Shown: piece after piece, positions 2,347 through 63,420 of the stretch
Layout of the letters: each line of letters opens with the position of its first letter
Position numbering within the stretch: position 1 is the stretch's first letter
DNA from: Haliotis rufescens
Taxonomy: Eukaryota
Assembly: GCF_023055435.1 (NCBI RefSeq)
Contig: NW_025963835.1
Span: 22,134,001 to 22,198,000 of the forward strand
Direction of reading: 5' to 3'
Length of the DNA stretch: 64,000 nt
Notes under the pieces: model-generated
What the model was told of the DNA's origin: nothing
The model's database searches: none
The model's input: only the letters and a program-made list of their open reading frames with translations
Made by a program: the position numbers and the translations under genes

Positions 2347-3520
2347 ATGTCGGATCTTGTCTCAGTTGCTGCGATCAAGGATCTTCTGACAGAGTGCCCA
2401 ATATGTATAGAACACTTTGATGACGCAACACGAATTCCTCGTCGTATGCCATGTTGCGTACAGTCCATATGTCAGCCCTGTCTGGAAAGCTACAGTGGAG
2501 GTGCTGCAACCCTATCCTGCCCCATGTGTCGACGGCGACATAATCTGCCTGGTGGGGTGAAATCTCTGCCCAAAGAGACTGTCATCCTGAAGACTCTGGA
2601 CTACCTCAAGATCCAGAAAGGTCTCCATCTGCCATGTACAGATTGCCCTGACAAGGAAATAGCTGTAGCTCAGTGTGACAACTGTGGAACATTTTTATGT
2701 TCCATTTGCTTAAGTGCCCATAAACGGAATACGGTATCAAAGACCCACACTATAAATACATTTGATGAAATGAAGGGCCGACCTCTACAGAGTTTTCGTC
2801 GTCTACATCAGTGTAGTCAGCACCAACAACCTGTACAGTTCTACTGCTACACTTGTGACAAAGTCGTCTGTGTGTCCTGCACTGTAGTAGATCACAAAGA
2901 AGGGAAGGGACACAACGTCGTGTCCGTGAATGAAGCACACCAAGGAAAGGCGAAGTCCATAAATGATGTTTTAGGAAAGATAGAAGAGAAGACAAAGAGA
3001 CTGAGCGAAACGGAGTCAGCCCTTCAAAAGAAGATAGAGAACATCAAATTGTCAATGAAGGTAGCAAGAGATGATATCAATAAAATCTTTGACAACCTGA
3101 AGGATAGGCTGAATCAAAGAAGAACAATCCTTCTATCAGATGTTGAGGGGAAATCTGCTGAGAATCTGAAGGTTACAGAGGAGGCCTTGGATTCGACAAG
3201 ACTACTGCTGACTAAAGTGAAATCTTCTTCCGAATACATGCGACAGATGCGCAACAAAGCTGACAAGGTAGAAGATCTTCAAGTAATGGGATCATCTAAG
3301 GCATCTTTGAACTCCATGTTGAAGGAGTCACCACAGGAAATACCCTTTGACAGGACTGGAGTCAGCTTTGTTCAAGCAAACGTACAACATCTGCAGAATA
3401 CTATCAATGTGGCAGGAATGGTCAGATCAGTCACGTTCTCCCCAACAGAGAGGCCGAATGGTATCCCAGATACTGCAGTACACAACGTCATCACACTGGA
3501 ACCTGCAGAGTTCCCTACAG
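2347..3520 (+). CDS. TRIM copy A, coding exon 1: RING, B-box1, B-box2, coiled coil
   Basis: Acceptor ttttgccag just before ACATC-ATG(2347). RING CPIC..CC..CQPC..CPMC; B-box1 CTDC..CDNC..CSIC..H..H; B-box2 CSQH..CYTC..CVSC..H..H; then a heptad-rich helix. Phase-1 donor ACAG|gtaggt at 3520. Confidence 0.92.
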
Positions 3521-3775
3521 GTAGGTAGTAAACTATTACATATTGTTCATCTATTTATCATGTGTGCAGCTACCTCCTATGTATTGAATCCTAGAAGGGA
3601 CACTGTCGCGTTGTCAGATTGTCGCCCTTACAACAATATAGTTCATATATCGTTATTGTCTGTGTCGTTTTTCATAAACCAAATGTGTCTTCACAGCAAG
3701 AAACAACGTTGCTATTTCTATTCAATTTAATTCTGGTCTCAGAACGGCCCTGTCGTTTGCGTCTTTTACAAATGT

Positions 3776-3945
3776 GAGTGAGTGAATGCGTAAGGTTTTA
3801 CGTTGCTTTTAGCAATATTCCAGCAATATCACGGCGGGGGGACACCAAAAATGGGCTTCATACATTGTACCCATGTCGGGAATCGAACCCGGGCCTTCAG
3901 CGTGACGAGCGAACCCTTCAGCCACGAGTCTACCCGACTGCCCCC
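3776..3945 (-). mobile_element. tRNA-derived SINE, family 1
   Basis: A/B-box head (GGTTCGATTCC), (ACTC)n tail, TSD ttacaaatgt. Confidence 0.85.
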
Positions 3946-4332
3946 TTACAAATGTAGAAGTACCAAAAAACTGTGATCGTGGAATTGAACCCCAGAACCA
4001 TACACTCAGGGATTTCCTGACACGCTGTAAAATAACTGTAATTTAGTTCAAAGCGGCGTTAAACCACAGGTCACGTTAGTCACGGGGAGTCCTTGGATGG
4101 GTGACTGTGTTCGGCTGCTTGGCTCCTTAGAGTTTCTAGGGCTTCGGTCCTGCCCAACGCTGAAGCACATGCACATGTGGTGCCTCTTTGGGCAAGGAAA
4201 TTCTTCTCACTTTATCAGCTTGTCGTCATGATATTTGATAACTGGTCATCATGTAACTTGTGTGATATCTTGACAGCGTAAATTGTAAGTTATTCTTTAT
4301 GATGTTACTACTTCGAAGACATTGAATATGTA

Positions 4333-6388
4333 TACTGAAAGGCAAAAGAAACGTCACTTCTGAAAATACTGATAAAACTTAACAGACACTGGCAGTGACA
4401 TGTTCTGTGGTCAATAAACTCATTTATCGTTCTACTGCTTCTTTTTGTTGCCTTAAAGTCCATTTAACAATTGAGTGTAAAATGGAGTGCTTTGCCCAAA
4501 CGCAGCCTACAAAAGTGCAATGGGACTCAGTTGCGGAAAATTCTTGTCAAAAACATGATGCACGTGCATATCGTGGATGGTATGGGTATAAAAGAAAATC
4601 AAAACTGGCTTTCGTTATTTCGATTAATCAGCTATGCCAAGATTATCAGGAAATGAGAGGCAACAAGCGATCGGAAGACTGCAAGCAGGCCAGAGTGCAC
4701 AGATCGTTGCACATGCATTCAATGTCAACGTCAGAACGATATATCGTTTGCAACATCGCCAAAACATCACCACCGACGACCGACGACCGACCGCGTAGTG
4801 GTCGTCCTTGAGTCACTATTCCCAGAGAAGATACGCCAAAATCTGCAGAATCGATTCCGAAAGGCCACTGAAACAGCTCGGCAAACCTTTGGCAACCACC
4901 AGCGTGCCATCAGTGATCGTACAGTCCGGCGTCATCTAACTGCCAACAACATCTCGTGCCACCGTCCTGCTCGTGTACCCATCCTGAGAGATCGTCACCG
5001 ACAGGCCCGACTGCATTGGGCCAGGCAGCATCAAAATTGGCGTCAACAGCAATGGAGAAGAATCATCTTCACTAATGAAAGTCGCTACTGTGTTTCAACG
5101 GTGGATGGCAGAGTCAGGGTCTGGCGAAAGAGGGGCTAACGTTATGCTGATGCTTGTGTTATGGAACGAGACCCGCGGGGCGGCCCAAGCATCATGGTTT
5201 GGGTGGAATCGGACAGAACTTTTTTTGCCCGTCATCAAAACCACACCTTTCAGCGAGACAACGTCCGTCCCCACACTTCCAGAGTCACCAGGGACTTCCT
5301 CCAGCAGCACAACATCCAAATCATGCCTTGGCCTGCCCTCAGTCCGGATTAGAATCCCATTGAACTCTTGTGGGATGAGATCCAACGCCGACCCAACGAC
5401 GTACGCCTAAGGCCGTCAACTGCAGCAGAACTGCGGGTAGCGTTCCTGAGGATATGGGCCCATATCCCCATATTAATGGCCTTCATCAACAGGCTAGTCC
5501 ACTGCATGTACAAGAGAAGTGTGGCTATAGTCAACGCCCGTGGTGGCCACACCAGGTACTGATTTTGAACCCCCCGGCTATGATGTCTTTTGTTGCCTCC
5601 CCAAATTCACAATTCGCAAAAACCTTCCCCAGACTGTGGGTCAAACACTGACTTTCTCCGACGAGATCATCGGCCCTGTTGTTCTACCGCTTTTGCGTCG
5701 TCATGGCCCAGGCATTACCTTTCCTCGTGACAAGGCCCGGCCTCAAATTGCTCGACTTGTTCGATATTCTGTTCAACAAAACAACGTGTATGTCATCCCC
5801 TGGATCGGCGCCTTCAACGTCAACCACGTGTTCCACAGACGCTCCAGGAACATATTCCAGCAAACATGGACAGATATCCCACAGGACTTCCAAGAGACAA
5901 AGATGTGTTGCTTGCATCGCCACCAGAGGTGGACACACACGCTATTGATGTGTAAGTTGACATTTTGGCATGTTCATGGTTTTTTTTATGAAATCACGCA
6001 TTTTCTGAAGTCAGTATGGCAAATTAAACCATTTGAATTCTTACAGGAGTCTTTTATCTGTTGGAAACCGAAATTGTTTCAGATTTGGTAAAAAACATAA
6101 CTTTGCATTAAATCTTATTCAATTGAAGGGAGCACGGGTGGCCCAGTCGTCTAAGGAGCCGCGATTCGCTGTGCAGAGTTGTGGGTTCGAAACCCGGTTC
6201 GCCCCGATTATGTTTCTTGGTTTGTCAGCACCATACCCGTGCTCGTTGGTTTCACCGAAGACCTGCATCACATCGGGCTTTCCTCCCACATGAAGCTGAC
6301 ACGCCGTGATATAACTGGAACTGTTAAATGCGGCGTAAAACACAACTCACTCACTATTCAATGTCACAAGATCTTTTGTTATTCAGTA
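4333..6388 (+). mobile_element. Degenerate Tc1/mariner (DD34E-like) element with an inserted SINE
   Basis: TA|TACTGAAAGGCAAAAGA ... TCTTTTGTTATTCAGTA|TA. Broken transposase with RSGRP, IFTNES, FQRDN..PH, WPALSPD*NPIE, GGHTRY. Confidence 0.85.
6128..6354 (+). mobile_element. SINE family 3, inside the Tc1 element
   Basis: Matches 59464-59747 with internal deletions. Confidence 0.8.
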
Positions 6389-6708: not shown

Positions 6709-9700
6709 ATGAATTACGGAAGCTGGAAGTTGCCCAAACTGAAGACTGAGCCCAAAGCACGAGGTGCTCGAGTGTCAGGAAGAAAAATCGATCTGATAGA
6801 ACGGTAAGTTTCTGATATTGCTATTTCTCGGCTTTTCTTACTGAGCAGTTATTTTATAAGATTGTAACAGTAACTATTCCCCATTTTGTCACTTTACACA
6901 GTGCAATATTGGTATCATGGTCATTGGTAGAACATATGTTTAGTTTAGACAACTGAGATCTCTAAACAAATAACGTAAGCACCGACGCGATAATGCCGAC
7001 AACATAAGTGCTTCAGTTTTCGTTCACGTAAACAACATGCCCCCATTGCTAAGGACGCTTTGAGATGCACTGACAAGGGAAAGAGCGGTGACCACGGATC
7101 TTGTACGGAAGGTAAGTGTCAGTCACAATAATTTATTCTTCGAATTAATGACTCACTGGCAGTGTGCAAAATATTACACCCTTTTACATGCGGTTGGGAT
7201 AACTTCCGGTTTATAGATTCTATAATTATTTGGGCAATCATTCAATAATACATCGTTCTTCGATACGAAAATACATAGTAAATTTAAGCAGAGATAGTAT
7301 CTTGGAAGCGCTCTAAGGACTGCATCGCGTTTAACTCACCAACCCCCACACAATCAATGTAACATTTTCTCCTATCTCCCCCACCTCCCAATAAATGACA
7401 AGTCCCCAAAAATGTATCTTAAATAATCATAATGCCCCCGTCCCTTTCTTCGTTGCTATACACATATTTTGAATTTTGATTCATCTGTGGCCAAAACATG
7501 ATGTAACAAAGCGTGAGGTAGGTACTGAAATATTTGTAAAACATTAAAAATTGCTTGAGCTCTGCACCATCCGATGGCTGAAGAAAGGCTGAGGGTTATC
7601 AAGTTCATCGTCCTTTACAGTGAGTGCCTTTTAGATTTTCATATAGTTTTATTCATTTTAGCAAGTGTGATTGGTTCACACATTTATTATTTCCTCAGTG
7701 TGAAAGGTACACACATCTATTATTAAAGCCAGAAGTTTAAAAGGTTCACACATTTATTAGGGCTGAAACGATACATTGGTGCACTGGTGCATCAAGTTTT
7801 CATGCATGATACACAGTACTTTTTTACACTTGCTAAATTAAGTTTCTTACTACTTGTTTTATGACACCCAAGTGTCAGTCAAGTACTGCAAATATGATGT
7901 AATTAGCATTTCAAATTCACTACTAGAAATTTACTTTTGAACCTGCTCTGAAATATTTAGTCAAGAAGTTTCAACACAATTTGACATAAAAATGTGACCT
8001 TATGTACTGTGATGTGACCTCCCTGTACGTATCGTTTCACCTAGAACATTTATTTCATCCTCAAGTGTGAAAGGTTCACACATTTTTTATTTCATCCACA
8101 GGTGTGAAAGGTTCACACATTTATTATTTCATCCACAGGTGTGAAAGGTTCACACATTTATTATTTCATCCACAGGTGTGAAAGGTTCACACATTTATTA
8201 TTTCTTCACCAGTATGATGGGTCCATACTTTGATGTGCATAACAGCGTTTATATTTCTAATATTAAAATTAGATGTAATGAAGCCTTTGAATGGTAGTCT
8301 AACAGAGTAATCTTTAGACATGGGTTCGATTCCGGTCGAAGGCAAACACATCAAGAATCCTTATTCACAGCATGTATTTTTATTTTGTGACACAATGTCT
8401 TATTCTTGTGATAAAATTAATATCCGTATTATTATATGTTGTTTGTTTTCTAACAAAAAATTTATATACAATTACTGTAGTGCAAGTAAAGATATTATTA
8501 CTGTACAAAAGTCAAGTTTTAGTACTGATAACAATGCAGAGATGGCTTAAGCTTCCTTACTGACAGAAATACTGATTTGTTGACTTTGGAGTTACAGGGA
8601 TCTGTTCTTAAAATAATTGTACTTTTTGACAAAATGGAAACTAACACATTTGTGTACTCCAAAAATAATTTAATAGTCCATATATTTTACAGTGATTTTT
8701 TTTCAATTAGGTTTTTTCTTTTACAGTTGTTTATTTCAAATGTTTTTCAGACTAGAGAGCTATGACCGAAACTGCAATTTTGGGAGAGAGCCAGAACTTG
8801 AAGCTGAGTTTGAAATGACACTGCCCCTAGTTGAAACTTATAGGGATGTAAATGGTGACAGTCATCTTCCTTTTTTAGCATATGAAGCTATAAATTATTA
8901 CTTACAGCCTTTTCAGAAGAAACTTGGTTCAAGTTCAAAGAATCTGTACACTAGTAGGTTTTTGAAATTTTTTCGTTATTCAAAACCTAGTAACATGTGT
9001 TTCCTGAAGTCTGAGTGCTGTCTGATGTGACTTACAAAGTCGATATTGCAATTGATGACGATGGTTCTGTTGTGGAGGGGCAGTGTGAGTGTGCTGCAGG
9101 CCAGGGTCCATCAGGACATTGCAAACATATTTGTGCAGAGTTATATGCTATGCACAAGTTTTCAACAACTGGCGATGTTTTAACTGAAGAAACATGTACT
9201 CAAAGATTGCAAACATTTCATAAAAGTAAACCCTATAAAGGCAGTCCCATAAAGGCGACTGACCTTGATTTATGCAACAGTGAATTGAATGTTATATTTG
9301 ACCCACGACCAGTTCAGTATCGCAAAGTGCCAAATTACCCTGACTTTTTCCGCAATGTTTTGTTGAACCACCCTAGTGTCAATACATTTCCAGTTGCTCA
9401 AATGTTTCCTCCAGCAAATCCATTTGCTGTTAATCATGATCATGATTTTCTTAAGTTATCTTTAGCTGACCAATACCTGAAATCCCAGAATATATCAGAA
9501 ATATCAGATATGGACAAAACCAACCTTGAAATAATAACCCGTAAACAGTCAAAGAGCGAGGAATGGAAAACTGAACACACACAGAGAATTTCTTCTTCCA
9601 ATTTTAGGAAAATTTGTTTGGTAACAGACAAAACTGATTTTCATAAACTTGCTAGATCAATGACTAAGCCTTTCGAGGACATTCAAAGTCCACCACTTAG

Positions 9701-10172
9701 ACATGGCAGAAAATATGAAAAGGTGGCAATAAAAGCTTTTGAAAAGTCAAGTGGTTTCAAAACCTCACCATGTGGCATGTTTGTGTCAGATGTTCATCCA
9801 TTTCTCGCAGCTACACCAGATTCACTTCTCGGTGATGATACTACCATTGAAGTGAAATGTCCATTTGCATCTAAAGACCGTCTAATCTCTGAGATAACTG
9901 TTCCCTATTTGAAGGTATCTGAGGGAAAACTTACCCTTGACAAAAGCAAGCCATATTTCTTTCAATTGCAAAGGCAGCTCTACTGTACTGGTAGAAAACA
10001 GTGCATTTGTATTGTATACACGATGAAGGATTTGAAATATTTTACTGTATCTCGAGATGACCATTTCATTGAATCTATGGTTGAAAAACTTGTGGCATTT
10101 ATGACACCTTTTTTCAAAAAGGCACTACTTGACAAATTCTATTTCAGAGATTATGACAGGTATTCCTGGTAA
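6709..10172 (+). pseudogene. ISL2EU ORF2: SAP - SWIM Zn finger - YqaJ (lambda-exonuclease-like); exons 6709-6803 and 8751-10172; frameshift near 9015
   Basis: Exon 1 WKLPKLKTEPKARGARVSGRKIDLIER splices in phase 2 to LESYDRN. SWIM CECAAG..CKH. YqaJ motifs RISSSNF, HGRKYE, ATPDSL, IEVKCP, YFFQLQ. Confidence 0.85.
8065..8212. repeat. 37-bp tandem repeat (4 units) with internal hairpin GTGTGAA-AGG-TTCACAC; degenerate units at 7665-7760
   Basis: Units start at 8065, 8102, 8139 and 8176. Confidence 0.9.
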
Positions 10173-14748: not shown

Positions 14749-16430
14749 CGTAAATACTTCGTTGTAGTTGTTGGTCGTGCAAATATCTATGAACCGCGTA
14801 ATATACCGGAAGTACGCGCAGGACCGTAGCGTTTGGCGCCATCTTTTGGCGAAGTAGTAAAGGGGCATAACTGAGGAATGTTGGCCATACTATCACCAAT
14901 GTTCTGCTCGTGCAAACGTAACCAAATCCATAAATGTCAAGTAAATGTTTAATATGAGTTGCCCAAGTAATTCTATCACATTCATCCAGCTCCTTCATTG
15001 TGAATAACATTGTCGGGGATATCTGTCATCATTCATTCTAATTGGTTTATACCAGCATTTAATAGTCTTCATATTATAATCCATTATAATTTCCATAAAC
15101 CGAACACAAATAAGGCCGTAGTTGCATTAATGCGCTGAACAATAAACTAATTTTGTTTGTTGTTCTTTTGTGTTAAAGATTAAAAAGACACCCTGTAAAG
15201 TCATACCTTCAACGTACTTATTTAGAAGAATTGACTTCATATGTAGCCTCAGGTACAAATATGCAAATATTTCAGTGTACACGTAATTGACACTTACGTT
15301 TGTGCGGATGTGTTACATTTATGAACATAAACGAAAAGACATAAAGACTGTTCCCTGAATACATACTGCAAGTATTGATCGATAACAATAATATATAGTT
15401 ATTTAATATTTCGACAAACAGACAGCTCATAATCTCTCAATGATAGTGTTTACTTTCACAGATATAGATAGTGAAGCCTAATTCGTTGAGGTCACAAATC
15501 ATAATTAATGAGGATATCATACTACATAAAAAGGAAGTAATAACGAAATGGATGGGCGTATCACACATGTGAATTAGTCCCCAGATTCAAGCATTCATGA
15601 CTCATGGTGTGCCATTAATAATCAAGTGCCAGCATATATGATGAAAACTGAAATTTGATACATGTTTGTTTGACGTCATGACTTGTTTTATGTCTTTGGA
15701 GATGTGGCATTGAGACAAGACGACAGTGGTATATTGATAAATATTATTATATATTTCATCAACTTTCGTTCAACTGAAATAAAACAACCTGGATGTGTAA
15801 AACAGAATTTGAAACTTTTTCGGCAACATTAAATTACGACTATATCATGTAAGTAATGTCTTTGAAAAAACAAGTTCGTTTATGTTAATTTCATAACATG
15901 CGTAATTGTTATATATAATTAGACATTAATATAATTACATGCAAATTTGTTTCTAAAAAGCCTATTGTTAATATCGGACGTATGTGTTTAATTAGAATGT
16001 GTTTATTCTCTTCAATTTGTCTCTGTATTTTACATTTTTTAAGAATAAAATATGATTAATTTTGTTATTTAAGCATTGACGTGCATGCACCGACGTTTAT
16101 ACAGTTTGACCCTTGCTCTATGTAAGCCCATCCTCACACAAAGTGTCAAATTGAATTCTTATCATTCTTTTATTTCACTATTTTATACCTCGAAGGATGT
16201 GTACACATCTTCAAATAGTAGGTCATGTTAACACTGGCCACCGTAAACCAACCAGCTGCATCTTGGAGAAATAGTTTCTCAAAAGAAGTGAGATGAGCGT
16301 ATGTATGCTCAAAATGTTCCACAGTAACATCGTTTGTAGTTTGGTTACAACATACATTTATAAATGTAAAGGGTATTAACGTCGCTTTCCAGATTATTGT
16401 ACTGAAAAAGCTACGTGCGTGCATTTATGC

Positions 16431-16485
<55 letters not shown>

Positions 16486-17203: not shown

Positions 17204-17262
17204 AGGCAGGCAGGCAGTACGTGTACATGGGACACACATACTGATTAATATCTTTGTTTCAG

Positions 17263-22559: not shown

Positions 22560-24673
22560 AAGATAATAGAACTTCAGGACAGAAGACGGATCCTTGTCAG
22601 ACATTGAAGGCTTTTTTAGCAATGGTTTTAAACTCACTAACGAGGCCGTAGAGTCAACTAAACAACTGCTAAACAAGGTAACGTCTTCTTTGGACAACCA
22701 CACAGCAGATGAGGAGTAGAGCTGACCAGACATCTACAAGTTACGACATCATCGGCTTCTTCTTTCAAAAGGATGTTGCAGGAGTCTCACATTGAGAAAC
22801 AATATACGAGGACAGGCGTAGGCTTTGTACCTGCCAACCTGACCCACCTTTCCTCCGCAATCCAGGGAGCAGGACTGATAAGGTCAGTCACGTACTTCCC
22901 AACACAGAGGCCGGGATATGTACCAGGGGCTGACAGATACATTGCAATCACACTGACACCTGCAGAATTTCAAAAGGGTAAATTAATTTTTATTATGTAC
23001 ATGTATGTAAAAATATCTATAAAATGTTATTGTCGACATGAGGTAGCTGTGGTTCGACAGTTTGTGATGACTACTGTCCCACGTCTGCTTATAATGACTT
23101 AAGTTTATAACTAAATGTAAACGGTTGGATATATTCATTATTATAGTGTGTTTGGGTATGTTGTAGTGAAACTAACATTTAGTTTTAAATAGATAAAGGT
23201 ATATCATAATCTTTAGTTCGACAGTTGGTCTATTTCATTTCTTAGTTACATTGTAATCTGTTTAAGTCGCTGATGTGGACAAGACGATTTCCAGTGGAGA
23301 TGAAGCCATTTCATGTGAGATGTCATGTATTTAAGCTCCAACTTATCTTACTCATGTGCCCATCAACATAAGGGGCACCGCTTGACCTGTGATGTAAGGC
23401 TCCTGTGCGGATTTCCGTAGACGGTTATGCCAAAGTCTGTAGATGATTGGTTTGAATCAAAATTGAACCTTGACTATGACTCTTTGTTTGTCTACATCAT
23501 ACGCATCCTCATCGGTTTCACAAGCACCAGATGCTTGCCGTAAGAGGCGACTAACGAGATCGGGTAGTCAGGCTCGCTGACTTGTTTTCTGTTTGTCATA
23601 ATATCCCAATTGCGCAGATCGATGCTGGTCCAAACGCGAATATTTACAGACCGCCTTCATATAACTGGCGGCGTTAAATAACAAACAGACAAAAAATCCC
23701 AAGCTACAGATAGTCGTGGAAGTTCGATGGATAGATGAAGGACATTAAAAAAAACCCATATAACTGTTCATATGATTTGCTTTGTCTTGTACTATATATT
23801 TCGTTGAAATGAAATGTCACTTTTTTTACTTGAAGGAATAATACATGGGAGGTGGAAAATACATATTTCGTCTTGTATCATTTTAATAAAAACATTCTCA
23901 GTTATGAGGCGACTGTCAACTTGAATGGGTGTTATGTTATACTGATTCAATAATGTGTATTTGTGAATGAGACTTACAATGAATGTGTTTTGTGTTATTA
24001 GTTCGTCTCTTGTTTCCTCCCTAGGTCCGCACCTTGAATGGCACTGCAGTACAGCGAGTGACGACATCACTGTATCTGATACTTTGGTAACAAATGAAAA
24101 GCCCAAGACTCCGCCCAAAGACATAGAATGTCGAAAAAGGTCGTGGAGACGTCTGTTGACATCAAGACCTTTGGTTATCAGAGGTGGAAGCCGAGAGATG
24201 TTTCTGGTGAAAGTCAGCTTCTCTTTGAAAAAAGGGTCACTGAGAAAAGAAGCATGGTGTTTGAGACAGCAATGATTGCCAACCCCGCAGATACTTGCTG
24301 GAACCAATCAACTGGACTGAGTGTACGTATCATAGGATGTCCAAAGCATAAGCACCAGCTTTGTCTCTGGGTGAGGTTTGATGGCAAACTCCTCTCTGAT
24401 ATACCTATTGTTTGCAATCAAATTGGTAAGGCAGGTGCCTTACATCTAGACACTCTACTGGGCGGTAGGAGCAGTAAGATTTATGTTGTTGACATTGGCA
24501 ACACTACAGTGATTCAGTCTGTGACTGACACTGTGTGTGAAAGAACATTCTGGGTCATGGTGTATCTAGATGCATCCCAAGATTCAAACATGACGTGTGA
24601 ACTAATATCAGGTCAAAACCTTACACTATCAGAAGGAATGACCCAGTTGTTATCTCTGAAGGGAAATGACTAG
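22560..24673 (+). pseudogene. TRIM copy D: 5'-truncated divergent pseudogene (exon-1 tail to 22977, microexon 23267-23314, last exon 24025-24673)
   Basis: RTGVGFVPANL..AGLIRSVTYFPTQRP..ITLTPAEF matches the exon-1 ends of A, B and E. RING and B-boxes are missing. Frameshifts at ~22590-22740 and in the A-run near 24230. Last exon reads PHLEW..TGLSVRIIGCPKHKHQLC..FWVMVY. Confidence 0.85.
23533..23692 (+). mobile_element. SINE family 2 (partial)
   Basis: Core and tail present. Confidence 0.7.
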
Positions 24674-29690: not shown

Positions 29691-30864
29691 ATGTCGGATC
29701 TTGTCTCAGTTGCTGCGATCAAGGATCTTCTGACAGAGTGCCCAATATGTACAGAACACTTTGATGACGCAAAACGAATTCCCCGTCGTATGCCATGTTG
29801 TGTACAGTCCATATGTCAGCCCTGTCTAGAAACCTGCAGTGGAGGTGCTGCAACCCTATCCTGCCCCATGTGTCGACAGCGACATAATCTGCCTGGTGGG
29901 GTGAAATCTCTGCCCAAAGAGACTGTCATCCTGAAGACTCTGGACTACCTCAAGATCCAGAAAGGTCTCCATCTGCCATGTACAGATTGCCCTGACAAGG
30001 AAACAGCTGTAGCCCAGTGTGACAACTGTGGAACATTTTTATGTTCCATTTGCTTAAGTGCCCATAAACGGAATACGGTATCAAAGACCCACACTATAAA
30101 TACCTTTGATGAAATGAAGGGCCGACCTGTGCAGAGTTTTCGTCGTCTACATCAGTGCAGTCAGCACCAACAACCTCTACAGTTCTACTGCTACACTTGT
30201 GACAAGGTCGTATGTGTGTCCTGCACTGTAGTAGATCACAAAGAAGGGAAGGGGCACAACGTCGTGTCTGTGGATGAAGCACACCAAGGAAAGGCGAAGT
30301 CCACAAATGATGTTTTAGGAAAGATAGAAGAGAAGACAAAGAGACTGAGCGAAACGGAGTCAGCCCTTCAAAAGAAGATAGAGAACATCAAATTGTCAAT
30401 GAAGGTAGCACGAGATGATATCAACAAAATCTTTGACAATCTGATCGATGGGCTGAATCAAAGAAGAACAATCCTTCTATCAGATGTTGAGGGGAAATCT
30501 GCTAAGAATCTGAAGCTAACAGAGGAGGCCTTGGATTCGACAAGACTACTGCTGAGTAAAGTGAAGTCTTCTTCCGAATACATGCGACAGATGCGCAGCA
30601 AAGCTGACAAGGTGGAAGATCTACAAGTAATGGGGTCTTCTGAGGCCTCTTTGAACTCCATGTTGAAGGAGTCACCACAGGAAATACCCTTTGACAGGAC
30701 CGGAGTAATTTTTGTTCAAGCAAACGTAAAACATCTTCAGGATACTATCAAGGTGGCAGGAATGGTCAGATCAGTTACGTTCTCCCCAACAGAGAGGCCG
30801 AATGTTGTGCCAGATACTGCAGTATACAACGCCATCACACTGGAACCTGCAGAGTTTCCTACAG
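29691..30864 (+). CDS. TRIM copy B, coding exon 1 (RBCC); intact gene 29691-30864 + 39634-39675 + 40241-40872 = 615 aa
   Basis: About 94% aa identical to the A exon; ag acceptor before ATG; donor ACAG|gtaggt; 1174+42+632 = 1848 nt, open throughout. Confidence 0.92.
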
Positions 30865-39345: not shown

Positions 39346-39554
39346 TTTGTTTGTTTGTTGTTTGAATCCGCACCCAGCGGTATGTCAGCTATATGACGGC
39401 GGTCTGTAAATAATCGAGTCTGGACCAGACAGTCCAGTGATTGACACCATGATCATCGATGTACGCTATTGGGATACGATGACATGAACCAACCAAGTCA
39501 GCGTGTCTGACCACCCGATCCCATTAGACCTGTTCTGACCCGGATCTTCACGGT
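39346..39554 (-). mobile_element. SINE family 2
   Basis: TSD ttctgcatta; empty site in C near 58680. Confidence 0.78.
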
Positions 39555-39633: not shown

Positions 39634-39675
39634 TGATGGAGATGGACCGGAGCATCTGTGACCAGGAGATAACAT
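39634..39675 (+). CDS. TRIM copy B, 42-nt microexon (VMEMDRSICDQEIT)
   Basis: tttcag|...|gtaaga; phase 1-1; conserved across paralogues. Confidence 0.82.
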
Positions 39676-40240: not shown

Positions 40241-40872
40241 GCCCGACTCTGGAATGGGACTCAAGCACTGCTGATAACACTATTGACGTGTCTGGATGTG
40301 TAATCACAAACACCACCTTAGCCGTCCCTTCTCCTGACACAGGATGTCGGATACAAAATATCACTTCATGTCTGGCATCCAGGCCTTTAATGGTTAAAAA
40401 ATGCCAAGGCCAGCGATGCATGTTTCGCGTAAAGTTTCGGGTTTGTGTAAAGGAATTGATACAAGATAATAAACTTATACAAGAGATTGCCCTGACCCCC
40501 ACCCCTGTAGATGCTGTCTGTTATCAAGTCACCGGACTGAGTGTACGTGTTGTTACATGCCCCAACCACAAGCAGCAGCTGTGTCTCTGTGTAGTCTGTA
40601 ATAACACCCTCTTCACTGATCGCCCTCTCATTCAGAACAGAGTTGGACAATCTATTGACCTACAACTGTGTTTTCTAATGGATGGGGCTAATGACAAAAT
40701 ATTAGTTATTGATGCCGGTGATAACAAAGTGTACACCACCGTCACAGATGTTGCTTTTGACAGACCCATGTGGGTCATGATGTATGTTGGTTATCCCGCA
40801 ATATCAGATGTAAGAGGAGAACTGATTACAGGCCACAACATCACAGGAACCTTCGCAAACTACAATCATTAG
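40241..40872 (+). CDS. TRIM copy B, last exon: divergent PRY/SPRY (B30.2)-like domain
   Basis: Acceptor cttcccacag. LEWDSSTADNTIDVS resembles the PRY start LxLDPxTAxxxLxLS. FLMDGANDKILVID..VYTTV..VAFDRPMWVMM resembles the SPRY end VFLDYExGxLSFY..IYTF..FxxPLYP. Confidence 0.85.
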
Positions 40873-53416: not shown

Positions 53417-56400
53417 TATTTTATACAAATAGGGCATCATATCATATACTGTTTGGAGATAAAAGTTGTATCACTCTAACACCTGGAACTGTTTGTAATA
53501 TTGTTTACTTTATATATTCTACGTGCATGAGGACCATAGTTAAGCAGTACAGAATGAATGAAAGTGTCTCAGAATCTCTGCTCATATGGATTGCACATTC
53601 CTGAACCTCTGTCTCTCCGACACATATGAATAAATAGAGAAAGGAACTCAAGTCTAGAATGATTTGGCCAGTCCTAAATGCCTGAGCCCTGGGCCTGATT
53701 AATAAACATTGTTCTAGGTGCTATTTGGATTTTATTTTACCTATTTATTTTACAAGCATGATAACTCTTTGTTTCTTGGACAACCTGGAATCTTATCAGG
53801 GTTTCTGAAATAAATAAAATATAGTTGTATCTTGTAGTTAACCACCTTATGCCATGCGCAGAGATTGCTTTGCTCTTGCATATAACAAGTAGGGAAAGAT
53901 ATATTGTATTAGTATGGAGCTTGGTGACAAAAGGTTTTTACTGTGTTGGGTATGAAAGTAATAGCAAAGACATGTCAATGTTTCGATCAGGGCTACTGTG
54001 CATCACTGAATGTTTCGGAGATGGGCGAGTTGGGTTGACTCAGTAATTCGCGTAAATTTCGATCTGTCCGAAGTCGAGGCTTGCAAATACAGTACAGCAC
54101 AATCTTCAAAGACACATAAACTACATGTTATATACCTGATGTGCAGATTGTGAGTTAAACATCGTATCACGCAATGACAGCCGAGACAGCGATGCGCTCG
54201 TTAGACGTCAACTAGTTTAGCGGAAGATAGTGTCACGTGCATACATAAGCCACGCCCACTCACGAATATTGTAGATTTAAGACCATTGTAGGTTTAAGGG
54301 CACAACATACGTATGATATTTAATTATTTTGGCATTTGCATACAAATGATAAAGTTTATATTTATAACGGCAGTTTCCTCTTTGAAAGAGACTATAATAC
54401 AATTAAGCTATAACATTGTAAAACAATGTTTTATTCTTTTTATTCATGACAACTTGCCGTTGACATTACAACTTGCTAATTAGAATCGTGCAAGGCATTT
54501 TTGGTGTGTCCTTTAGGGTCCGACCATTTGATTTGATTTGTATCGAATAAAACATTGCTCGAAAAAACCCTAAAATGCATCATACTGTTTGAATAAAATA
54601 CACTTGTTTGCCACAAAGAAACATTGTTGCAAAGTGTTTAATAAAAAATATTCAGGGCTCATTGCTTTATTTAGAAATGGGCGGTCCCTTCCACAAGCAA
54701 AGATGACATGTATGGCTAATGTCATTCCCACCAGAAGCGTGACATCTTAAAACTGTAAGAATAAAATAGATATGGAGTACATTGACACGCATATAAGTGT
54801 GCTAGAGTTCTGACCTTTGTCATTGTGATTTCCCATTAGATGTTTTGCAGGTAACCAGGAGTATTTGTTCGAATCCCATATTCACCCCAATAAATTGCTC
54901 TTGGTTTGTCTGCACCATATTCAAGCTCGTGAGTTTCTACACTGTTACTTTAAACGTTCCTCCCACATTATGCTGACATGTCCTTATATCACTGAAATAT
55001 TGTTTAAAGCAGACTAAAGCCCAACACCACTCAGGTAATCATCCGGGGCGAAATAAACTATTAGAATATCGCTTGTTTACCCACTGCACAGGGGTTTTAC
55101 TTGAGGTAAAACATGTGAAATCCCGAATCTGTTCTTGTCTCTTATCAACAACTGTATAAAACGTGTATACTACATTGTAACAGACGTATGGGTTGATGAC
55201 GTGTCAATATGTATGTGTACGGGTGTGTATATGTGTCTACTCTTAGAAGCAGATCATATAGAGTTTCCTCTTTGTGGATATTTGGGTTGTCATTGTTTCC
55301 CAATTATGCCTTTGATCATTGAATGCTTAACAACGACAGTACATACACATTAGGACTACCTCATTACAGATTCTTTTTCAATTTCATATAACATAATCGT
55401 GATGATTTTCCTTTGCCAGACATCATGTGGGATCTTGTCTCAGTTGCTGAGATCAAGGATCATCTGACCGAGTGTCCAATATGTAAAGAACACTTTGATG
55501 AGTCGACACGAATTCCACGTCGTATGCCGTGCTGTGTACAGTCCTTATGTCAACCATGTCTAGAAACCTGCAGTAGAGGCACAACAGTCTTAGACTGCCC
55601 CATGTGTCGACATCGACATTACCTTACAGGCGGTGTTAAATCTCTTCCCAAAGAGACTGTCATCCTGAAGTTTCTGGACTACCTCAAGATCCAGAAAGGT
55701 CTCCATCTTCCATGTTCAGATTGTCCTGACAAGGAAACGGCTGTAGCCCAGTGTGACAACTGTGGAACATTTTTATGTTCCATCTGCCTAAATGCTCACA
55801 AACGAAATATGGTAACAAAAGCCCACACAATAAATACCTTCCACGAGATGAAGGGCCGACCTGTACAGAGTTTCCGTCGTGTACATCAGTGTAGTCACCA
55901 CCAACAACCTCTACAGTTCTACTGTCACACTTGTGACAAGGTTGTCTGTGTGTCCTGCACTGTAGTAGATCACGATAAAGGGAAGGGGCACAACGTCCTG
56001 TCCGTGGATGAAGCACACAAAGAAAAGATAAAATCCACTGATGAAGTTTTGGTCAAGATGGAGGAAAAGACGAAAAGACTGAGCAAAACAGAGTCAGATC
56101 TTAACATGAAGATAGAGGACTGTCAAAGCGCGTATCAAGAGATGATATCAACAGAGTCTTTGACAACTTGATCGATGCTCTGAAGCAAAGACAAAAAATC
56201 CTTCTGTCTGATGTTGAGGAGAAATCAGCTAAAAGTCTCAAGCTAACAGAGCAGGCGCTGGATGCAACAAGACTACTGCTGAGGAATGCGAGGTCATCTA
56301 TAGAATACACGCGACAGATGAGCAGCACAGCTGACAGGATAGAATACATGTTGAAGGAGGAGTCACCAAAGGAAATACCCTTCGTCATGACTGGAGTTAA

Positions 56401-56768
56401 TTTTGTCCAAGCAAATGTAAAACATCTTCAGGATACTATCAAGGTGGCAGGAATGGTCAGATCAGTCACGTTCTCCCCAACGGAGACGTCGCATGGTGTG
56501 GAAGATTCTGCAGCATACACCGCTATCATTGTGGAACCAGCCGAGTTACCTTCAGGTAGGTAGTACTAAATAATATATTTCTCATGGAAATAACAGATAC
56601 GATAGACAGACAGTATGAAGTAAGTGTACGAAGCGTATAAAAGGGAAATCACTCAACATAACTGCAATACAACATGTTAAACACGCGTGATTTTACTTTA
56701 CTGATTTCACTGTAAAATATTGACAAGGAGTTCTTTACATTTATAAATTCGAGCAATATTTGGTAAAG

Positions 56769-58381: not shown

Positions 58382-59024
58382 ACTTCATGTTGGTAAATCA
58401 GTGGAAGGGAATTGGCTATTTAGCCATAATGGAATTATATGAGATCAAACGTATTATCCAAATTACCTAGTTTTGACTTTGCCAAGCAGGGCAGAAATTC
58501 TGATCCATATGTAAAAAGAACAGATAAGTAAGAAGGGGAGCAAAACTGATGCCCAAGGTGATGACTTCTTTCTTGCCTAAATATCTACGGCAAATATTCA
58601 GATGCATCAGAATGACACGACCCCGTCCAGTGAAGTTTGTACTTCTGTTTCATCCCGCGATACTGTTATAACGGGTAATGTATGCAATCAAAATGGTAAG
58701 AGCAGGCAGTCCGTGTACATGGGACACACATAAAGATTAATATCTTGTTTCAGTGATCGAGATGGACCGGAAGATGTCTGACCAGGAGATAACATGTAAG
58801 ATCTGCGCCCTTGACGACATGATGTTACAAGATATTTTTCATTGGTTTTGTATCTGTCAGTTGATTTCGAGAGGTTACGACCGCTTTCGAGATCTGATCT
58901 TTGTGCTTACCTTTTGATAGTTTAGTACAGAAGTTTTATTAGTGGTCGCGTTAGCAATGTTGCATATCATGCATGTGTTGCCTGATCTTTGAATGTTATG
59001 TAATAGAAGTATGTAGGAGAAGAA

Positions 59025-59747: not shown

Positions 59748-60619
59748 ATGACAGCTTATAACTTTCATTTGGTAGATTGACTAAATTGTCGGTAAAAAAC
59801 GTATTAAGTGATATATATGTTAGCTACAAGAAGACATGTTGGTACTCATTACGAATGTTTTTTTTATCACAGGCCCGACTCTGGAATGGGACACAAACAC
59901 TGCAAAATGCATCATTGACGTATCTGAATGTGTAATCACAAACACACGACCGGCTGTTATTTCTCCGAACACAGGATGTCGGATACGAAATGCCTGATCA
60001 TGTCTAGCGTCCAGACCTTTGGTGGTCCGAAACAGTCCTGGGCAGCGTTGCATGTATGGAATAAAGTTGCGGTTATCTATAAAGACATTGGTAGGAAGTA
60101 ATAAACTTATACAAGAGATAGCCCTGACCTCCTCTCCTGAAGATGCTGTCCGGCCGCAACACATTGGACTGAGTGTATATGTTGCAACATGCTCCACCCA
60201 CAACCAACAGCTGTGTCTTCGGGTAAAGTACAATAAAAAGCTCCTCAATCACATTCCACTCACTGAGAACAGAGTTGGACAGTCTTATGACCTTCAGCTA
60301 TACTTTCTACTGGATGGAGCTAGTGACAAAATATTAGTTGTTAATGCCATTGACAATTCAGTGTACACCACTGTTACAGATGTAGAATTTGACAGACCGC
60401 TGTGGGTTATGATGTATGTTTGTGATCCTACAAAAGCGGTTGTAAGAGGAGAACTGATATCCGGCCACAAAATCCAAGGAACCTTTGCCAACTTTAATCT
60501 GTAGAATCTGTAGAACATATTAACATTTTAACAATAGATTTTTGTAAATAAAGTGTTTGAATCTGAATTTCCCACACAGTACTGTCAGTGATCATGAGCA
60601 CGCGATTTGTTTGGAAATG

Positions 60620-61763: not shown

Positions 61764-61764
<1 letters not shown>

Positions 61765-61982
61765 TTGTTTTTTGCCTAACGCCGCACTCGAGACTGGACC
61801 AGACAATCAAGTGATTGACATCATGCGCATCGATCCACACAAATGGGATACGATGACATGTATCAACCAAGTCAGCGAGCCTGACGATCCGATCCCGTTA
61901 GTCGCCTCTTACAACAAGCATGGTCGCCTTTTACGGCAAGCACGTGGTACTGAAGACCATTCTACCCCGGATCTACACGGGT
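61764..61982 (-). mobile_element. SINE family 2
   Basis: Consensus body and 5' end. Confidence 0.78.
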
Positions 61983-62243
61983 TATATATATCAAGGCAAT
62001 TTTCATTTAAGGTATTGAAAACATTAATAATCATGCTTTCATTAAACTGTACCACCTTAACACGAAAGAAGTTAGCATGAAATCCATCTCTATCATGAAC
62101 CATCACAATTATTTTCTCTGTACTAATTGATATAATTGGATTGCGTGTTTTCATATAGATAGGGGGCATAATGTAAGAGGACTGTCATACAAATTAATAT
62201 TGCAACATTCATTATCGAGTTGTGTGTGCTTTTCGCAGGAACA

Positions 62244-63420
62244 ATGTCTGACTCTCTCTCATCGTCACATGTCCAAAGTTATCTCACAGAGTGTCCAGTA
62301 TGTTCTGAACAATTTGATGATGCCGCGCGCCTTCCCCGCCGTATGTCGTGTTGTGTACAGTGTATCTGTCAGCCATGTTTACAGCAGATCTACAATGAAG
62401 AAGACAAGACGTTGCTCTGCCCTGTCAGTCACCACAAGCACGAACTTCATAATGGAGTTACCTCTCTTCCGACTGAGCCTATCACATCGAAGATACTAGA
62501 CTACCAGAAAATCCAAAGAAATGAGCGGGTGGTATGTACAGATTGCCCAAGCAGCAACGAGGCAATAGCACGTTGTGAAGAATGCTGTGTATTTTTATGC
62601 AAGGAATGCAGGATAACCCATGATCAACACAGATTGTCACGACATCACAGAACTCATACATTTGAGGAGATTAAAGGTCAGCCGATCCAGGCCTTGAGAC
62701 GACTGCACGAATGCGGCCATCACCCACAGCGTCAGGAATACTTCTGCAATACCTGCGAGAAGATCATATGTGTTTCCTGCACTGTAGAGGAGCATCGAGA
62801 AGGAGCGGGACACATGTTTGTACCTGTGGATAAAGCACACCAAGAAAAATCAATACATGTTGATAACATGTTAAATCAACTTGACGAAAAGGCTGTAGAA
62901 CTGAGTCAAACAGAACAAGAATTGTTACACAAAGTCGACAACATGCACGTGTCAGCACTTGCAGCGAGACAGGACATCAACAAATGCTTTGAGAAGATGT
63001 TAGAGGAGTTGCAACAAAGGAAAGCAACTCTTTTGTCAGACGTTGAGGAGAGAACCGGCGCTGATGTAAAGCTGACCGAAGAGATCCTCCAGTCAACCAG
63101 AGAGCTGCTGGCGAAGGTGAGATCCTCAACAGAGTACATTAGACAGATGAGAAGCATGGCAGATAACATCGAGGATCTTCATCTGATGCTTTCCTCTACA
63201 CCCTCACTGAATGGCATACTAGCTGAGGAGCCAAAGAAAGTGGAATTTGTAAGCAGGGGAACATCCTTTGTCCCAGCCAATCTGAATAATCTCGCGTCCA
63301 CTATCAAGGTGACAGGCATGGTCAGGTCTGTCACATACACGCCAACCCAGAGGCCAAAATATGTACCACAGAAGACGATATATAACACCATCACACTGGA
63401 GCCAGCTGAGGTACCTGCAG
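62244..63420 (+). CDS. TRIM copy E (more divergent paralogue), coding exon 1; downstream exons lie outside the window
   Basis: Acceptor tttcgcag, ATG 62244, RING/B-box1/B-box2/coiled coil, ends ITLEPAEVPA G|gtcggt (phase 1, homologous donor). Confidence 0.88.

What the first reader, a model, noticed from the sequence alone, without database searches (positions are those of the whole stretch)
2347..63420. Tandem birth-and-death array of invertebrate TRIM genes with a cryptic, highly divergent PRY/SPRY (B30.2)-like C-terminal domain
Seen: five same-strand paralogues. A-D share an RBCC exon (only its tail in D), a microexon and a ~632-nt last exon; only E's RBCC exon is in the window. One copy is intact (B) and three are disabled in different ways (A, C, D). 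The last exon has PRY-like (LEWDSSTA..IDVS) and SPRY-like (FLMDG..KILVID..VYTT..FDRPMW) ends but an unrecognisable middle. Established: RBCC-B30.2 arrays (TRIM5, TRIM21, fish finTRIMs) are fast-evolving antiviral sensors, described mainly in vertebrates, whereas expanded mollusc TRIMs usually end in NHL/beta-propeller domains. Inference: this is a lineage-specific, TRIM5-like pathogen-recognition family that standard annotation would miss.
Basis: partly seen in the sequence, partly recalled or inferred. Interest (0 to 1): 0.85.

Follow-up and report, generated by a model that had tools for sequence, protein, structure and literature searches.

The report
Abalone TRIM array with hidden B30.2 domain
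This stretch of the red abalone genome is the end of a ~470-kb tandem array of TRIM-type ubiquitin-ligase genes whose last exon folds like the PRY/SPRY (B30.2) target-binding domain of vertebrate antiviral TRIMs although sequence searches do not recognise it; the family is confined to abalones and its last exon evolves fast, but an immune role remains untested.

Summary
The window (Haliotis rufescens, scaffold C57:22,134,001-22,198,000) carries five same-strand paralogues. A, B and C have the stated three exons with GT-AG borders. B is intact (615 codons). A has one TAG. C has four deletions plus a TGA. D is an RBCC tail plus a frameshifted last exon. E starts in the window and ends just beyond it.

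Exon 1 is an RBCC module: a Cys-rich RING variant, two B-boxes and a coiled coil. The last exon has no Pfam or PDB sequence match. AlphaFold models of it and of a 25%-identical paralogue both match solved PRY/SPRY domains first (Z 15.4-15.7, rmsd about 2.8 A, about 155 residues). Weak sequence signals agree.

The window is the end of an array of about 34 loci, and the genome holds at least 105 related last exons. Relatives were found only in Haliotis. Replacement changes are enriched in the last exon (dN/dS about 1, against 0.2-0.4 in RBCC), yet its frames stay open. Positive selection is not proven.

RefSeq already models these genes as "TRIM33/45/71-like", 615 aa, so annotation misses only the domain. 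Pathogen recognition is inference. The scan noted a similar array elsewhere in this genome (s1-808085).

The parts
2347..3520 (+). Copy A, exon 1 (RBCC: RING variant, two B-boxes, coiled coil), open
   Evidence: blastn 95.4% to B; translation open; 99.2% aa identity to RefSeq model P0027, 'TRIM33-like', 615 aa
17263..17304 (+). Copy A, 42-nt microexon
   Evidence: 41/42 identical to B's; AG/GT borders; its peptide is present in RefSeq model P0027
17892..18523 (+). Copy A, last exon (B30.2-like), disabled by one TAG at 18224-18226
   Evidence: three 98.7-99.3% identical paralogous copies elsewhere in the array are open
22642..22971 (+). Copy D, remnant of the 3' third of an RBCC exon
   Evidence: blastn 67% to B positions 835-1168; tblastn with annotated relatives
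24027..24673 (+). Copy D, last exon of another subfamily (~40% aa identity to B), frameshifted by a 2-nt insertion at 24233-24234
   Evidence: five more D-type copies in the array are split at the same point
29691..30864 (+). Copy B, exon 1 (RBCC), intact
   Evidence: Pfam zf-B_box E 4.7e-12 in two stretches, TRIM_CC and RING below cut-off; aligns to the KAP1/TRIM28 RBCC over residues 10-303, E 8e-16
39634..39675 (+). Copy B, 42-nt microexon (14 codons, phase 1)
   Evidence: AG/GT borders; the same peptide occurs in RefSeq models from H. cracherodii and H. rufescens
40241..40872 (+). Copy B, last exon: 209-aa sequence-cryptic PRY/SPRY (B30.2)-like domain plus stop
   Evidence: no Pfam/PDB sequence hit; AF2 pLDDT 78, pTM 0.79; VIA-align Z 15.4-15.5 to MID1, TRIM25 and TRIM16L B30.2
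55425..56555 (+). Copy C, exon 1 (RBCC), disabled by deletions of 7, 4, 23 and 9 nt from 56121 onward
   Evidence: the intact paralogue is RefSeq model P0031, 613 aa
58754..58795 (+). Copy C, microexon
   Evidence: 88% to B's; AG/GT borders
59873..60504 (+). Copy C, last exon with TGA at 59995-59997
62244..63420 (+). Copy E, exon 1 (RBCC), open; its 51-nt microexon and last exon lie 148 and ~965 nt beyond the window's end
   Evidence: the last Cys of the RING is replaced (CPVS)
39347..39527 (+). Left arm of an inverted pair of a dispersed 181-nt repeat that brackets B's microexon and last exon (right arm 41099-41279)
   Evidence: 85% complementary; 10 copies of the element in the window; the same pair occurs in A (16996-17176 / 18750-18928)

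Best explanation
The window is the distal end of a ~470-kb tandem array in Haliotis rufescens. Its genes encode TRIM-type proteins with three parts: an N-terminal RBCC module (an eight-cysteine RING variant, two B-boxes and a coiled coil, all in one exon), a 14-17-residue linker microexon, and a C-terminal exon that folds as a PRY/SPRY (B30.2) beta sandwich. The B30.2 sequence has drifted below the reach of Pfam.

Shown: the architecture; the B30.2-like predicted fold; restriction to Haliotis at detectable similarity; growth by repeated segmental duplication of multi-gene units, with some copies decaying; purifying selection on the RBCC exon; and near-neutral average replacement rates in the last exon although its frames stay open.

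Inferred: the coiled coil dimerises the protein, the RING/B-box end recruits ubiquitin-conjugating enzymes, and the fast-changing B30.2 exon is the specificity module that binds target proteins. The array would then offer a repertoire of binding specificities, most plausibly for intracellular recognition of pathogen-derived or other rapidly changing proteins, by analogy with TRIM5, TRIM21 and fish finTRIMs. I put the architecture and fold at about 0.85 and the immune-sensor role at about 0.4.
For: Exon structure, GT-AG borders and phases. Identical three-exon RefSeq models of 615 and 613 aa on the same scaffold and in three other Haliotis species.

RBCC: Pfam B-box E 4.7e-12; KAP1, TRIM2/3, TRIM32, PML and TRIM5 chains at E 8e-16 to 4e-4.

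B30.2:
- AF2 pLDDT 78.2, pTM 0.79.
- Foldseek top hits are PRYSPRY domains, E about 3e-7.
- VIA-align Z 15.5-14.3, rmsd about 3 A over 157-171 residues; the first 42 entries are all B30.2.
- An unbiased scan of 48,161 chains puts 12 B30.2 domains first.
- A second model, of a 25%-identical paralogue, gives TRIM25 Z 15.7, rmsd 2.7 A.
- The family profile aligns its PRY motif to TRIM16/TRIM16L at E 0.05.
- Distant paralogues give sub-threshold Pfam SPRY hits, E 0.002 and 0.014, and are linked to the core family by hhalign at 99.5% probability, E 1.6e-22.
- Atlas neighbours are SPRY/PRY clusters.

Family size and array: at least 105 last-exon and 111 RBCC matches in the genome.

Selection:
- RBCC dN/dS 0.23-0.43 against last exon 0.82-1.43. 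Fisher P 0.0016 (A-B) and 0.0045 (B-G4).
- Between subfamilies the last exon shows dN/dS 0.35-0.44.
- About 224 substitutions in the A/B clade predict 7-8 stops. One internal stop is seen.
- No indels in the exons between A and B, against 14 gap openings in 2.6 kb of flanking non-coding DNA.
Against: - No sequence method reaches significance for PRY/SPRY. Pfam gives nothing for the window's copies, and the best PDB profile hit is E 0.05.
- L-type lectin domains (Emp46p/Emp47p, ERGIC-53) score only 1.3-2 Z units below the B30.2 hits (Emp46p Z 14.2 against 15.5; Emp47p 13.6 against 15.4), so the fold alone gives a modest margin.
- The PRY part of the model has low confidence (pLDDT 41-67 for residues 1-40).
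- Both models rest on alignments of paralogues from one genome.
- The canonical His ligand of the RING is replaced by Gln, and Pfam RING models stay below cut-off, so E3 activity is not assured.
- dN/dS above 1 is not significant in four independent pairs. The 'hot' regions give 1.32, P 0.19, and they were chosen after the fact.
- No expression, splicing or induction data could be obtained.
Confidence: 0.65

Rival explanations
1. These are the same RBCC-B30.2-like proteins, but they are not immune sensors. They are redundant, recently duplicated E3 ligases or adaptors with housekeeping, developmental or reproductive roles. Their last exon evolves fast only because constraint is relaxed after duplication.
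For: - Whole-exon dN/dS is about 1, not clearly above 1. Four independent pairs give 0.85, and the excess in the hot regions is not significant.
- Very young duplicates, 98.7-99.6% identical including non-coding DNA, have had little time for selection to act.
- About a third of the loci are already broken.
- No expression or induction data exist here.
- From general knowledge, not tested here: abalones are known for other fast-evolving, non-immune gene families such as the sperm lysin/VERL pair.
Against: - Stops and indels are depleted compared with the neutral expectation.
- dN/dS varies along the exon, from 0.33 at codons 151-180 to 1.6-1.7 at codons 76-120. A uniformly relaxed exon would not show that pattern.
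- Older subfamilies keep dN/dS at 0.35-0.44.
- A constant scaffold with a variable B30.2 domain, in large tandem arrays, is the pattern seen in finTRIMs and TRIM5.
Confidence: 0.27
2. The C-terminal exon is not homologous to B30.2. It is another concanavalin-like sandwich, for example an L-type lectin-like carbohydrate-binding module, fused to an RBCC module.
For: Emp46p/Emp47p, ERGIC-53 and legume lectins reach Z 13-14.2, close to the B30.2 hits at 15.5. No significant sequence match to PRY or SPRY was found. The family also carries an invariant C-x2-H-x4-C motif that canonical B30.2 domains lack.
Against: - In two independent models, the top 10-12 structures in an unbiased scan are all PRY/SPRY or SPRY domains, and they are covered almost end to end: 157 of 164 residues for MID1 and 163 of 170 for TRIM7.
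- The only near-significant sequence matches are PRY of TRIM16 and Pfam SPRY.
- Atlas neighbours are all SPRY-family clusters.
- The position after an RBCC module, and the conserved LxWD..TA and LW/LYP motifs, fit B30.2.
- There is no signal peptide or lumenal context for an L-type lectin.
Confidence: 0.06
3. The array is largely non-functional: a recently amplified block of decaying or unexpressed gene copies, possibly inflated by assembly duplication.
For: - Three of the four copies that lie wholly in the window are broken.
- D-type copies carry the same frameshift in all six units, so dead genes are being co-amplified.
- B has a 99.6% identical twin 247 kb away.
- No transcript evidence could be obtained.
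Against: - About 20 RBCC exons and about 21 last exons in the array are open.
- RBCC dN/dS is 0.23-0.43.
- Stops and indels are depleted.
- RefSeq predicts full-length models in four Haliotis species.
- The twins of the neighbouring genes C and E are only 92% identical. That argues against a simple duplicated-haplotype artefact.
Confidence: 0.05

Closest known systems
Vertebrate class IV (C-IV) TRIM-B30.2 multigene families: TRIM5/6/22/34 cluster, TRIM21, fish finTRIM and btr
   Same: RBCC followed by a C-terminal PRY/SPRY fold; the B30.2 domain sits in one exon; tandem arrays with intact and dead copies; a conserved RBCC with a fast-changing B30.2 domain.
   Different: - No detectable sequence membership in Pfam PRY or SPRY.
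- RBCC plus linker occupy one exon and a microexon, rather than several exons.
- The RING has Gln in place of the His ligand plus an extra Cys.
- An invariant C-x2-H-x4-C motif lies inside the sandwich.
- The RBCC is closest in sequence to TIF1-beta/KAP1 and TRIM2/3, not to class IV TRIMs, so orthology is unlikely.
- Antiviral function and positive selection are not shown.
Invertebrate 'class IV-like' RBCC-B30.2 genes (Branchiostoma, Nematostella, Trichoplax, Drosophila and C. elegans, mentioned in Boudinot et al. 2011, PMC3137616)
   Same: The RBCC + B30.2 architecture occurs outside vertebrates, which shows the combination is old or recurrent.
   Different: Those are few genes with recognisable B30.2 domains. 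Here there is a genus-restricted expansion of dozens of copies with a cryptic domain. Sardiello 2008 and Marin 2012 (PMC3503706) list the SPRY-only TRIM group as restricted to vertebrates.
Mollusc TRIM-NHL expansions (other arrays in this same genome noted by the scan, e.g. s1-818167, s1-815121)
   Same: Tandemly amplified RBCC genes with a variable C-terminal ligand-binding domain, in the same species.
   Different: The C-terminal domain is a beta sandwich (B30.2-like), not an NHL propeller. This family is confined to Haliotis.
TRIM16 / TRIM16L PRY-SPRY (PDB 7qs3, 6sjh)
   Same: Best sequence-level match of the family profile (PRY segment including a V-T-N-T motif, E 0.05) and among the best structural matches (Z 15.2).
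   Different: The match is sub-threshold and covers only about 60 residues. TRIM16 has no RING.

Membership tests
TRIM / RBCC | N-terminal RING finger (C3HC4 cross-brace) | tested here: inconclusive
   Pfam RING models stay below cut-off (zf-RING_5 E 0.039). TRIM2, TRIM32, TRIM56 and TRIM21 RING chains are hit at E 2e-6 to 5e-3. Eight Cys are conserved, but the His ligand aligns with Gln, and E-type copies lose the last Cys.
TRIM / RBCC | One or two B-box zinc fingers after the RING | tested here: met
   PF00643 E 4.7e-12 in two stretches (about residues 97-136 and 153-194), plus PF22586.
TRIM / RBCC | Coiled coil directly after the B-boxes | tested here: met
   PF25600 TRIM_CC scores 20.8 bits, below its 30-bit cut-off. 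However, a continuous alignment to the KAP1 RBCC crystal chain covers residues 10-303, E 8e-16.
PRY/SPRY (B30.2), Pfam PF13765 + PF00622 | Sequence match above the Pfam gathering score | tested here: not met
   No hit for the window's last exons. The best score among distant paralogues is 18.6 bits against a 26.3-bit cut-off. RefSeq relatives carry no precomputed SPRY or PRY hit.
PRY/SPRY (B30.2), Pfam PF13765 + PF00622 | Two-sheet bent beta sandwich of about 13 strands, superposable on solved B30.2 domains over nearly the full length | tested here: met
   The predicted model has 13 strands. Z is 15.4-15.7 at rmsd 2.7-3.2 A, with 153-164 residues aligned out of 164-195. B30.2 domains rank first in an unbiased scan for two models. 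This is prediction only, and the PRY part has low confidence.
PRY/SPRY (B30.2), Pfam PF13765 + PF00622 | Hallmark motifs: PRY L-x-(L/F/W)-D-x-x-T-A; SPRY Y-W-E-V; C-terminal L-(Y/W)-P | tested here: inconclusive
   LEWDSSTA and RPMW are present. YWE is present only in the distant paralogue subfamily and is replaced by M-F-R-V in the window's copies.
Vertebrate class IV TRIM (orthology with TRIM5, TRIM21 or finTRIM) | RBCC and B30.2 grouping with class IV members in sequence comparisons | tested here: not met
   The closest solved RBCCs are TIF1-beta/KAP1 and TRIM2/3. Only Haliotis relatives are found at the sequence level. No phylogeny with vertebrate TRIMs was built.
Birth-and-death multigene family | Tandem paralogues of different ages, with intact and independently disabled copies | tested here: met
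   The array has about 34 last-exon and 27 RBCC loci on C57, 21.73-22.20 Mb. Paralogue identity ranges from 40% to 99.6%. Lesions differ among A, C and D. A dead D-type copy is co-amplified six times.
Diversifying-selection receptor family (TRIM5-like) | dN/dS significantly above 1 at surface sites of the B30.2 domain | tested here: inconclusive
   Windows at codons 1-45 and 76-120 give 1.35-1.7. Four independent pairs give 1.32, P 0.19.
Diversifying-selection receptor family (TRIM5-like) | Expression and induction by infection, and binding of a pathogen component | not testable with these tools

The most novel reading that the evidence does not exclude
Abalones have independently built a TRIM5/finTRIM-like repertoire: dozens of RBCC proteins whose B30.2-type domain has diverged beyond sequence recognition, has acquired a conserved Cys/His (possibly zinc-binding) motif, and diversifies on a few surface loops to recognise viral or bacterial proteins inside the cell. 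This would be a protostome counterpart of vertebrate restriction-factor arrays.
Probability: 0.3. Interest if true: 0.7.

Novelty: new variant of a known kind. Interest (0 to 1): 0.5.

Why it matters
Large, fast-evolving TRIM-B30.2 arrays are a hallmark of vertebrate intrinsic antiviral immunity. The classical TRIM classifications list the SPRY-only group as restricted to vertebrates. A genus-restricted family of this architecture in abalones, invisible to domain databases, has three consequences. Domain-based surveys undercount B30.2 receptors in molluscs. The 'constant RBCC scaffold, variable B30.2' design would be recurrent in evolution. And abalone aquaculture and conservation (herpesvirus ganglioneuritis, withering syndrome) would gain a concrete candidate locus for resistance studies. 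The practical gain now is a corrected annotation for dozens of RefSeq genes whose names ('TRIM33-like', 'TRIM71-like', 'TRIM45-like', 'PML-like') come only from the RBCC half.

Tried and rejected
- Single-sequence Pfam and PDB searches of the last exon found nothing. A profile of the distant 'YWE' subfamily against PDB also found nothing at E <= 1.
The array map therefore rests on hit coordinates, not on a dot plot.
I did not attempt it by other means and used pairwise and windowed counts instead.
- I tested whether the dispersed 181-nt repeat marks the duplication-unit edges (a lead from s1-818167). None of its 10 copies lies at 21474, 27329 or 43858, so SINE-mediated recombination is not supported for the A/B units.
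- An Rfam scan of the window found no family at gathering score.
- Literature searches for mollusc or abalone TRIM-B30.2 expansions found no description of this family.
- hhalign of A1 against A2 was discarded because A1 contains A2's sequences. It was redone with the non-overlapping alignment A3.
- The joined three-exon protein was not sent to any search or fold tool. I joined exons only in a local script, to check frame continuity.

Full report
WHERE WE ARE. The window is G000:C57:22,134,001-22,198,000 of a 1.33-Gb, 615-contig genome. RefSeq proteins of Haliotis rufescens sit on a contig of exactly C57's length, 35,933,028 bp (XP_048252236; P0026-P0031), and on one of C512's length. The genome is therefore red abalone.

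CHECK OF THE OBSERVATION.
- I ran blastn of B's three exons against the window. It recovers copies A (2347-3520, 17263-17304, 17892-18523), B (29691-30864, 39634-39675, 40241-40872) and C (55425-56555, 58754-58795, 59873-60499). It also recovers an RBCC tail for D (22642-22971) and exon 1 of E (to 63420).
- All A, B and C exons have AG/GT borders and compatible phases. B reads through as 615 codons.
- A has a single CAG>TAG change at 18224-18226.
- C has four deletions (7, 4, 23 and 9 nt) from 56121 onward and a TGA at 59995-59997.
- D lacks most of the RBCC exon. Its last exon (24027-24673) is full length but carries a 2-nt insertion at 24233-24234 relative to an intact paralogue. D belongs to a different subfamily, about 40% identical to B, and no microexon was found for it.
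- E is complete just beyond the window, with a 51-nt microexon and a last exon.
- RefSeq models of 615 aa (P0027, 99% identical to A in both large exons) and 613 aa (P0031, the intact C-type) use exactly these three exons, microexon peptide included. So do models from H. cracherodii and H. rubra.

WHAT THE EXONS ENCODE.
- Exon 1 is an RBCC module. Pfam B-box scores E 4.7e-12 in two stretches. TRIM_CC and RING are below cut-off. There is a continuous alignment to the crystal chain of the TIF1-beta/KAP1 RBCC (E 8e-16), with further hits to TRIM2/3, TRIM32, PML, TRIM5, TRIM56 and TRIM21.
- The RING-like finger keeps eight cysteines, but the canonical His ligand aligns with Gln beside an extra Cys. 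E-type copies lose the last Cys. Ligase activity is plausible but not assured.
- The last exon (209 aa) has no Pfam hit and no PDB sequence hit.
- An alignment of 26 paralogous last exons from this genome (A1) gave an AlphaFold2 model with pLDDT 78.2, pTM 0.79 and 13 strands.
- Foldseek's best PDB matches are PRY/SPRY domains, E about 3e-7.
- VIA-align gives Z 15.5-14.3 at about 3 A over 157-171 residues, and the first 42 entries are all B30.2 domains.
- In a Foldseek-independent scan of 48,161 chains, the first 12 are B30.2 domains (MID1 Z 15.4, TRIM25 15.3, TRIM16L 15.2), followed by L-type lectins from Z 13.6.
- A second model, of a 25%-identical paralogue from another scaffold, gives the same ranking: TRIM25 Z 15.7, rmsd 2.7 A.

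SEQUENCE HINTS POINT THE SAME WAY.
- The family profile aligns its PRY segment to TRIM16/TRIM16L at E 0.05.
- Two distant paralogues that still carry the Y-W-E motif give sub-threshold Pfam SPRY hits, E 0.002 and 0.014. That subfamily is tied to the core family by hhalign at 99.5% probability, E 1.6e-22, using non-overlapping alignments.
- Protein-language-model neighbours are SPRY/PRY clusters.
- I conclude that the domain is a B30.2-type sandwich, probably a true but very divergent homologue.
- The margin over lectin-like sandwiches is modest, and the PRY part of the model has low confidence.
- An invariant C-x2-H-x4-C motif, kept even in the 25%-identical paralogues, has no counterpart in canonical B30.2 and is unexplained.

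FAMILY AND ARRAY.
- A six-frame search of the genome finds at least 105 matches to the last exon and 111 to the RBCC exon. Both are lower bounds.
- On C57, between 21.727 and 22.200 Mb, I count about 34 last-exon loci and 27 RBCC loci, all on the + strand. About 21 and 20 of them, respectively, are open.
- The window's order (A, D, B, C, E) recurs upstream as units: A-type followed about 6.3 kb later by a D-type pseudogene, and C-type followed about 5-6 kb later by E-type.
- All six D-type copies are split at the same point, so a dead gene has been co-amplified with its neighbours.
- Duplicates span a wide age range. B has a twin 247 kb upstream that is 99.6% identical over 3.6 kb. A has three relatives at 98.7-99.3%. 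The twins of C and E are about 92% identical.
- Within the window, the A and B units are homologous over 1-4196 ~ 27329-32008 and 15114-21474 ~ 37270-43858. Intron 1 differs through transposon content.
- Further clusters lie on C615, C523, C124 and elsewhere on C57, and more distant ones on C605, C580, C593 and C168.
I did not examine it.

TAXONOMIC RANGE AND ANNOTATION.
- An exhaustive phmmer search of 1.84 billion representatives with B's last exon finds 13 clusters. All are Haliotis (rufescens, cracherodii, rubra, asinina) except one weak Gigantopelta hit, E 5.6e-4.
- Word-seeded searches with a full-length relative's C-terminal region, and with the RBCC exon, return only Haliotis.
- The genes are annotated. 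RefSeq calls them 'TRIM33-like', 'TRIM71-like', 'TRIM45-like', 'TIF1-beta-like', 'PML-like' or 'uncharacterized'. Only B-box and coiled-coil Pfam domains are on record.

EVOLUTIONARY RATES.
- For A, B and a compact intact paralogue (G4, L049), dN/dS is 0.23-0.43 in the RBCC exon and 0.82-1.43 in the last exon. The contrast is significant for A-B (Fisher P 0.0016) and B-G4 (P 0.0045), but not for A-G4 (P 0.14). This confirms the sibling note s1-816423.
- Among 11 unique A/B-type last exons, the median pairwise dN/dS is 1.01.
- The ratio varies along the exon: 1.35-1.44 over codons 1-45, 1.6-1.7 over codons 76-120, and 0.33 over codons 151-180. Sites with up to five residues among 11 copies lie at 92, 93, 96, 118 and 184.
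- Four phylogenetically independent pairs give 0.85 overall, 1.32 (P 0.19) in the post-hoc hot regions and 0.60 (deficit P 0.016) elsewhere.
- Positive selection is therefore suggested, not shown.
- The exon is not simply decaying. Between subfamilies dN/dS is 0.35-0.44. About 224 substitutions in the A/B clade predict 7-8 nonsense changes, but only one internal stop is seen (Poisson P about 0.003-0.006 for one stop or fewer). A and B show no indels in 1.8 kb of exon, against 14 gap openings in 2.6 kb of flanking and intronic DNA.

HOW IT MOST LIKELY WORKS.
- Shown: the architecture, the predicted fold, the mode of amplification and the division of constraint.
- Inferred from what is established for TRIM proteins: the coiled coil forms an antiparallel dimer, the RING/B-box end engages E2 enzymes, and the B30.2 domain binds the target. 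The array would supply many binding specificities.
- The nature of the targets is unknown. Pathogen components are the most attractive guess because of the parallels with TRIM5 and finTRIM arrays. In oysters, TRIM genes are associated with herpesvirus resistance (PMC9437489).
- Relaxed constraint in redundant non-immune ligases is a serious rival.

COMPARISON WITH WHAT IS KNOWN.
- The classical classifications place the SPRY-only TRIM group in vertebrates (Sardiello 2008 as cited by Marin 2012, PMC3503706).
- Boudinot et al. 2011 (PMC3137616) already note class IV-like RBCC-B30.2 genes in several invertebrates.
- I found no paper describing this abalone family.
- It behaves like a class IV TRIM array but fails sequence membership in Pfam PRY/SPRY. 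Its RBCC is closest to TIF1/TRIM2-3-type proteins, so orthology with vertebrate class IV is unlikely.
- I file it as a new variant of a known kind.

LIMITS.
- The whole array could not be downloaded.
- No model coordinates were available, so variable sites could not be mapped onto the surface.
- Both structure models rest on paralogue alignments from a single genome.

Noticed in passing
window 4798-5139 (+), 9015-10172 (+), 12168-12599 (-): Intron 1 of copy A holds transposon remnants: a Tc1/mariner-type HTH_Tnp_Tc3_2 ORF (E 1.5e-10), a 385-aa open ORF with a SWIM finger and a YqaJ-like recombinase domain (E 5e-14), and a PIF/Harbinger DDE_Tnp_4 fragment (E 3e-24). They explain why intron 1 is 13.7 kb in A, 8.8 kb in B and 3.9 kb in the paralogue L049.
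   Followed up: partly
window 39347-39527 and 41099-41279 (also 16996-17176 / 18750-18928): A 181-nt dispersed repeat (10 copies in the window) forms an 85% complementary inverted pair that brackets the microexon and last exon in both A and B. No copy lies at the A/B duplication-unit edges, so it does not explain the duplications.
   Followed up: partly
B last-exon peptide residues 106-114 (window ~40558-40584) and all paralogues: The motif C-x2-H-x4-C is invariant across the whole superfamily, including 25%-identical paralogues. It is absent from canonical B30.2 domains. It may be a zinc site or a structural staple.
   Followed up: no
G000:C57:21916450-21927656 versus window 29691-40872: Copy B has a twin 247 kb upstream that is 100% identical in protein and 99.6% in 3.6 kb of DNA. 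The adjacent C and E twins are only about 92% identical. This points to a very recent duplication or gene conversion of B alone, or to an assembly effect.
   Followed up: partly
H. cracherodii RefSeq XP_071093520 (P0001, 1018 aa): This model chains RBCC, microexon, RBCC, microexon and last exon. It is either a read-through or mis-joined prediction across two tandem paralogues, or a real two-RBCC transcript.
   Followed up: no
G000:C605 (10.0-13.3 Mb), C580, C593, C168: Large further clusters of RBCC genes have a last exon 24-30% identical to B's, which still carries the Y-W-E SPRY hallmark. This is probably the older, wider mollusc family from which the Haliotis-specific group arose. An Atlas cluster of 80 mollusc 'hypothetical proteins' matches it at 0.96.
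   Followed up: partly
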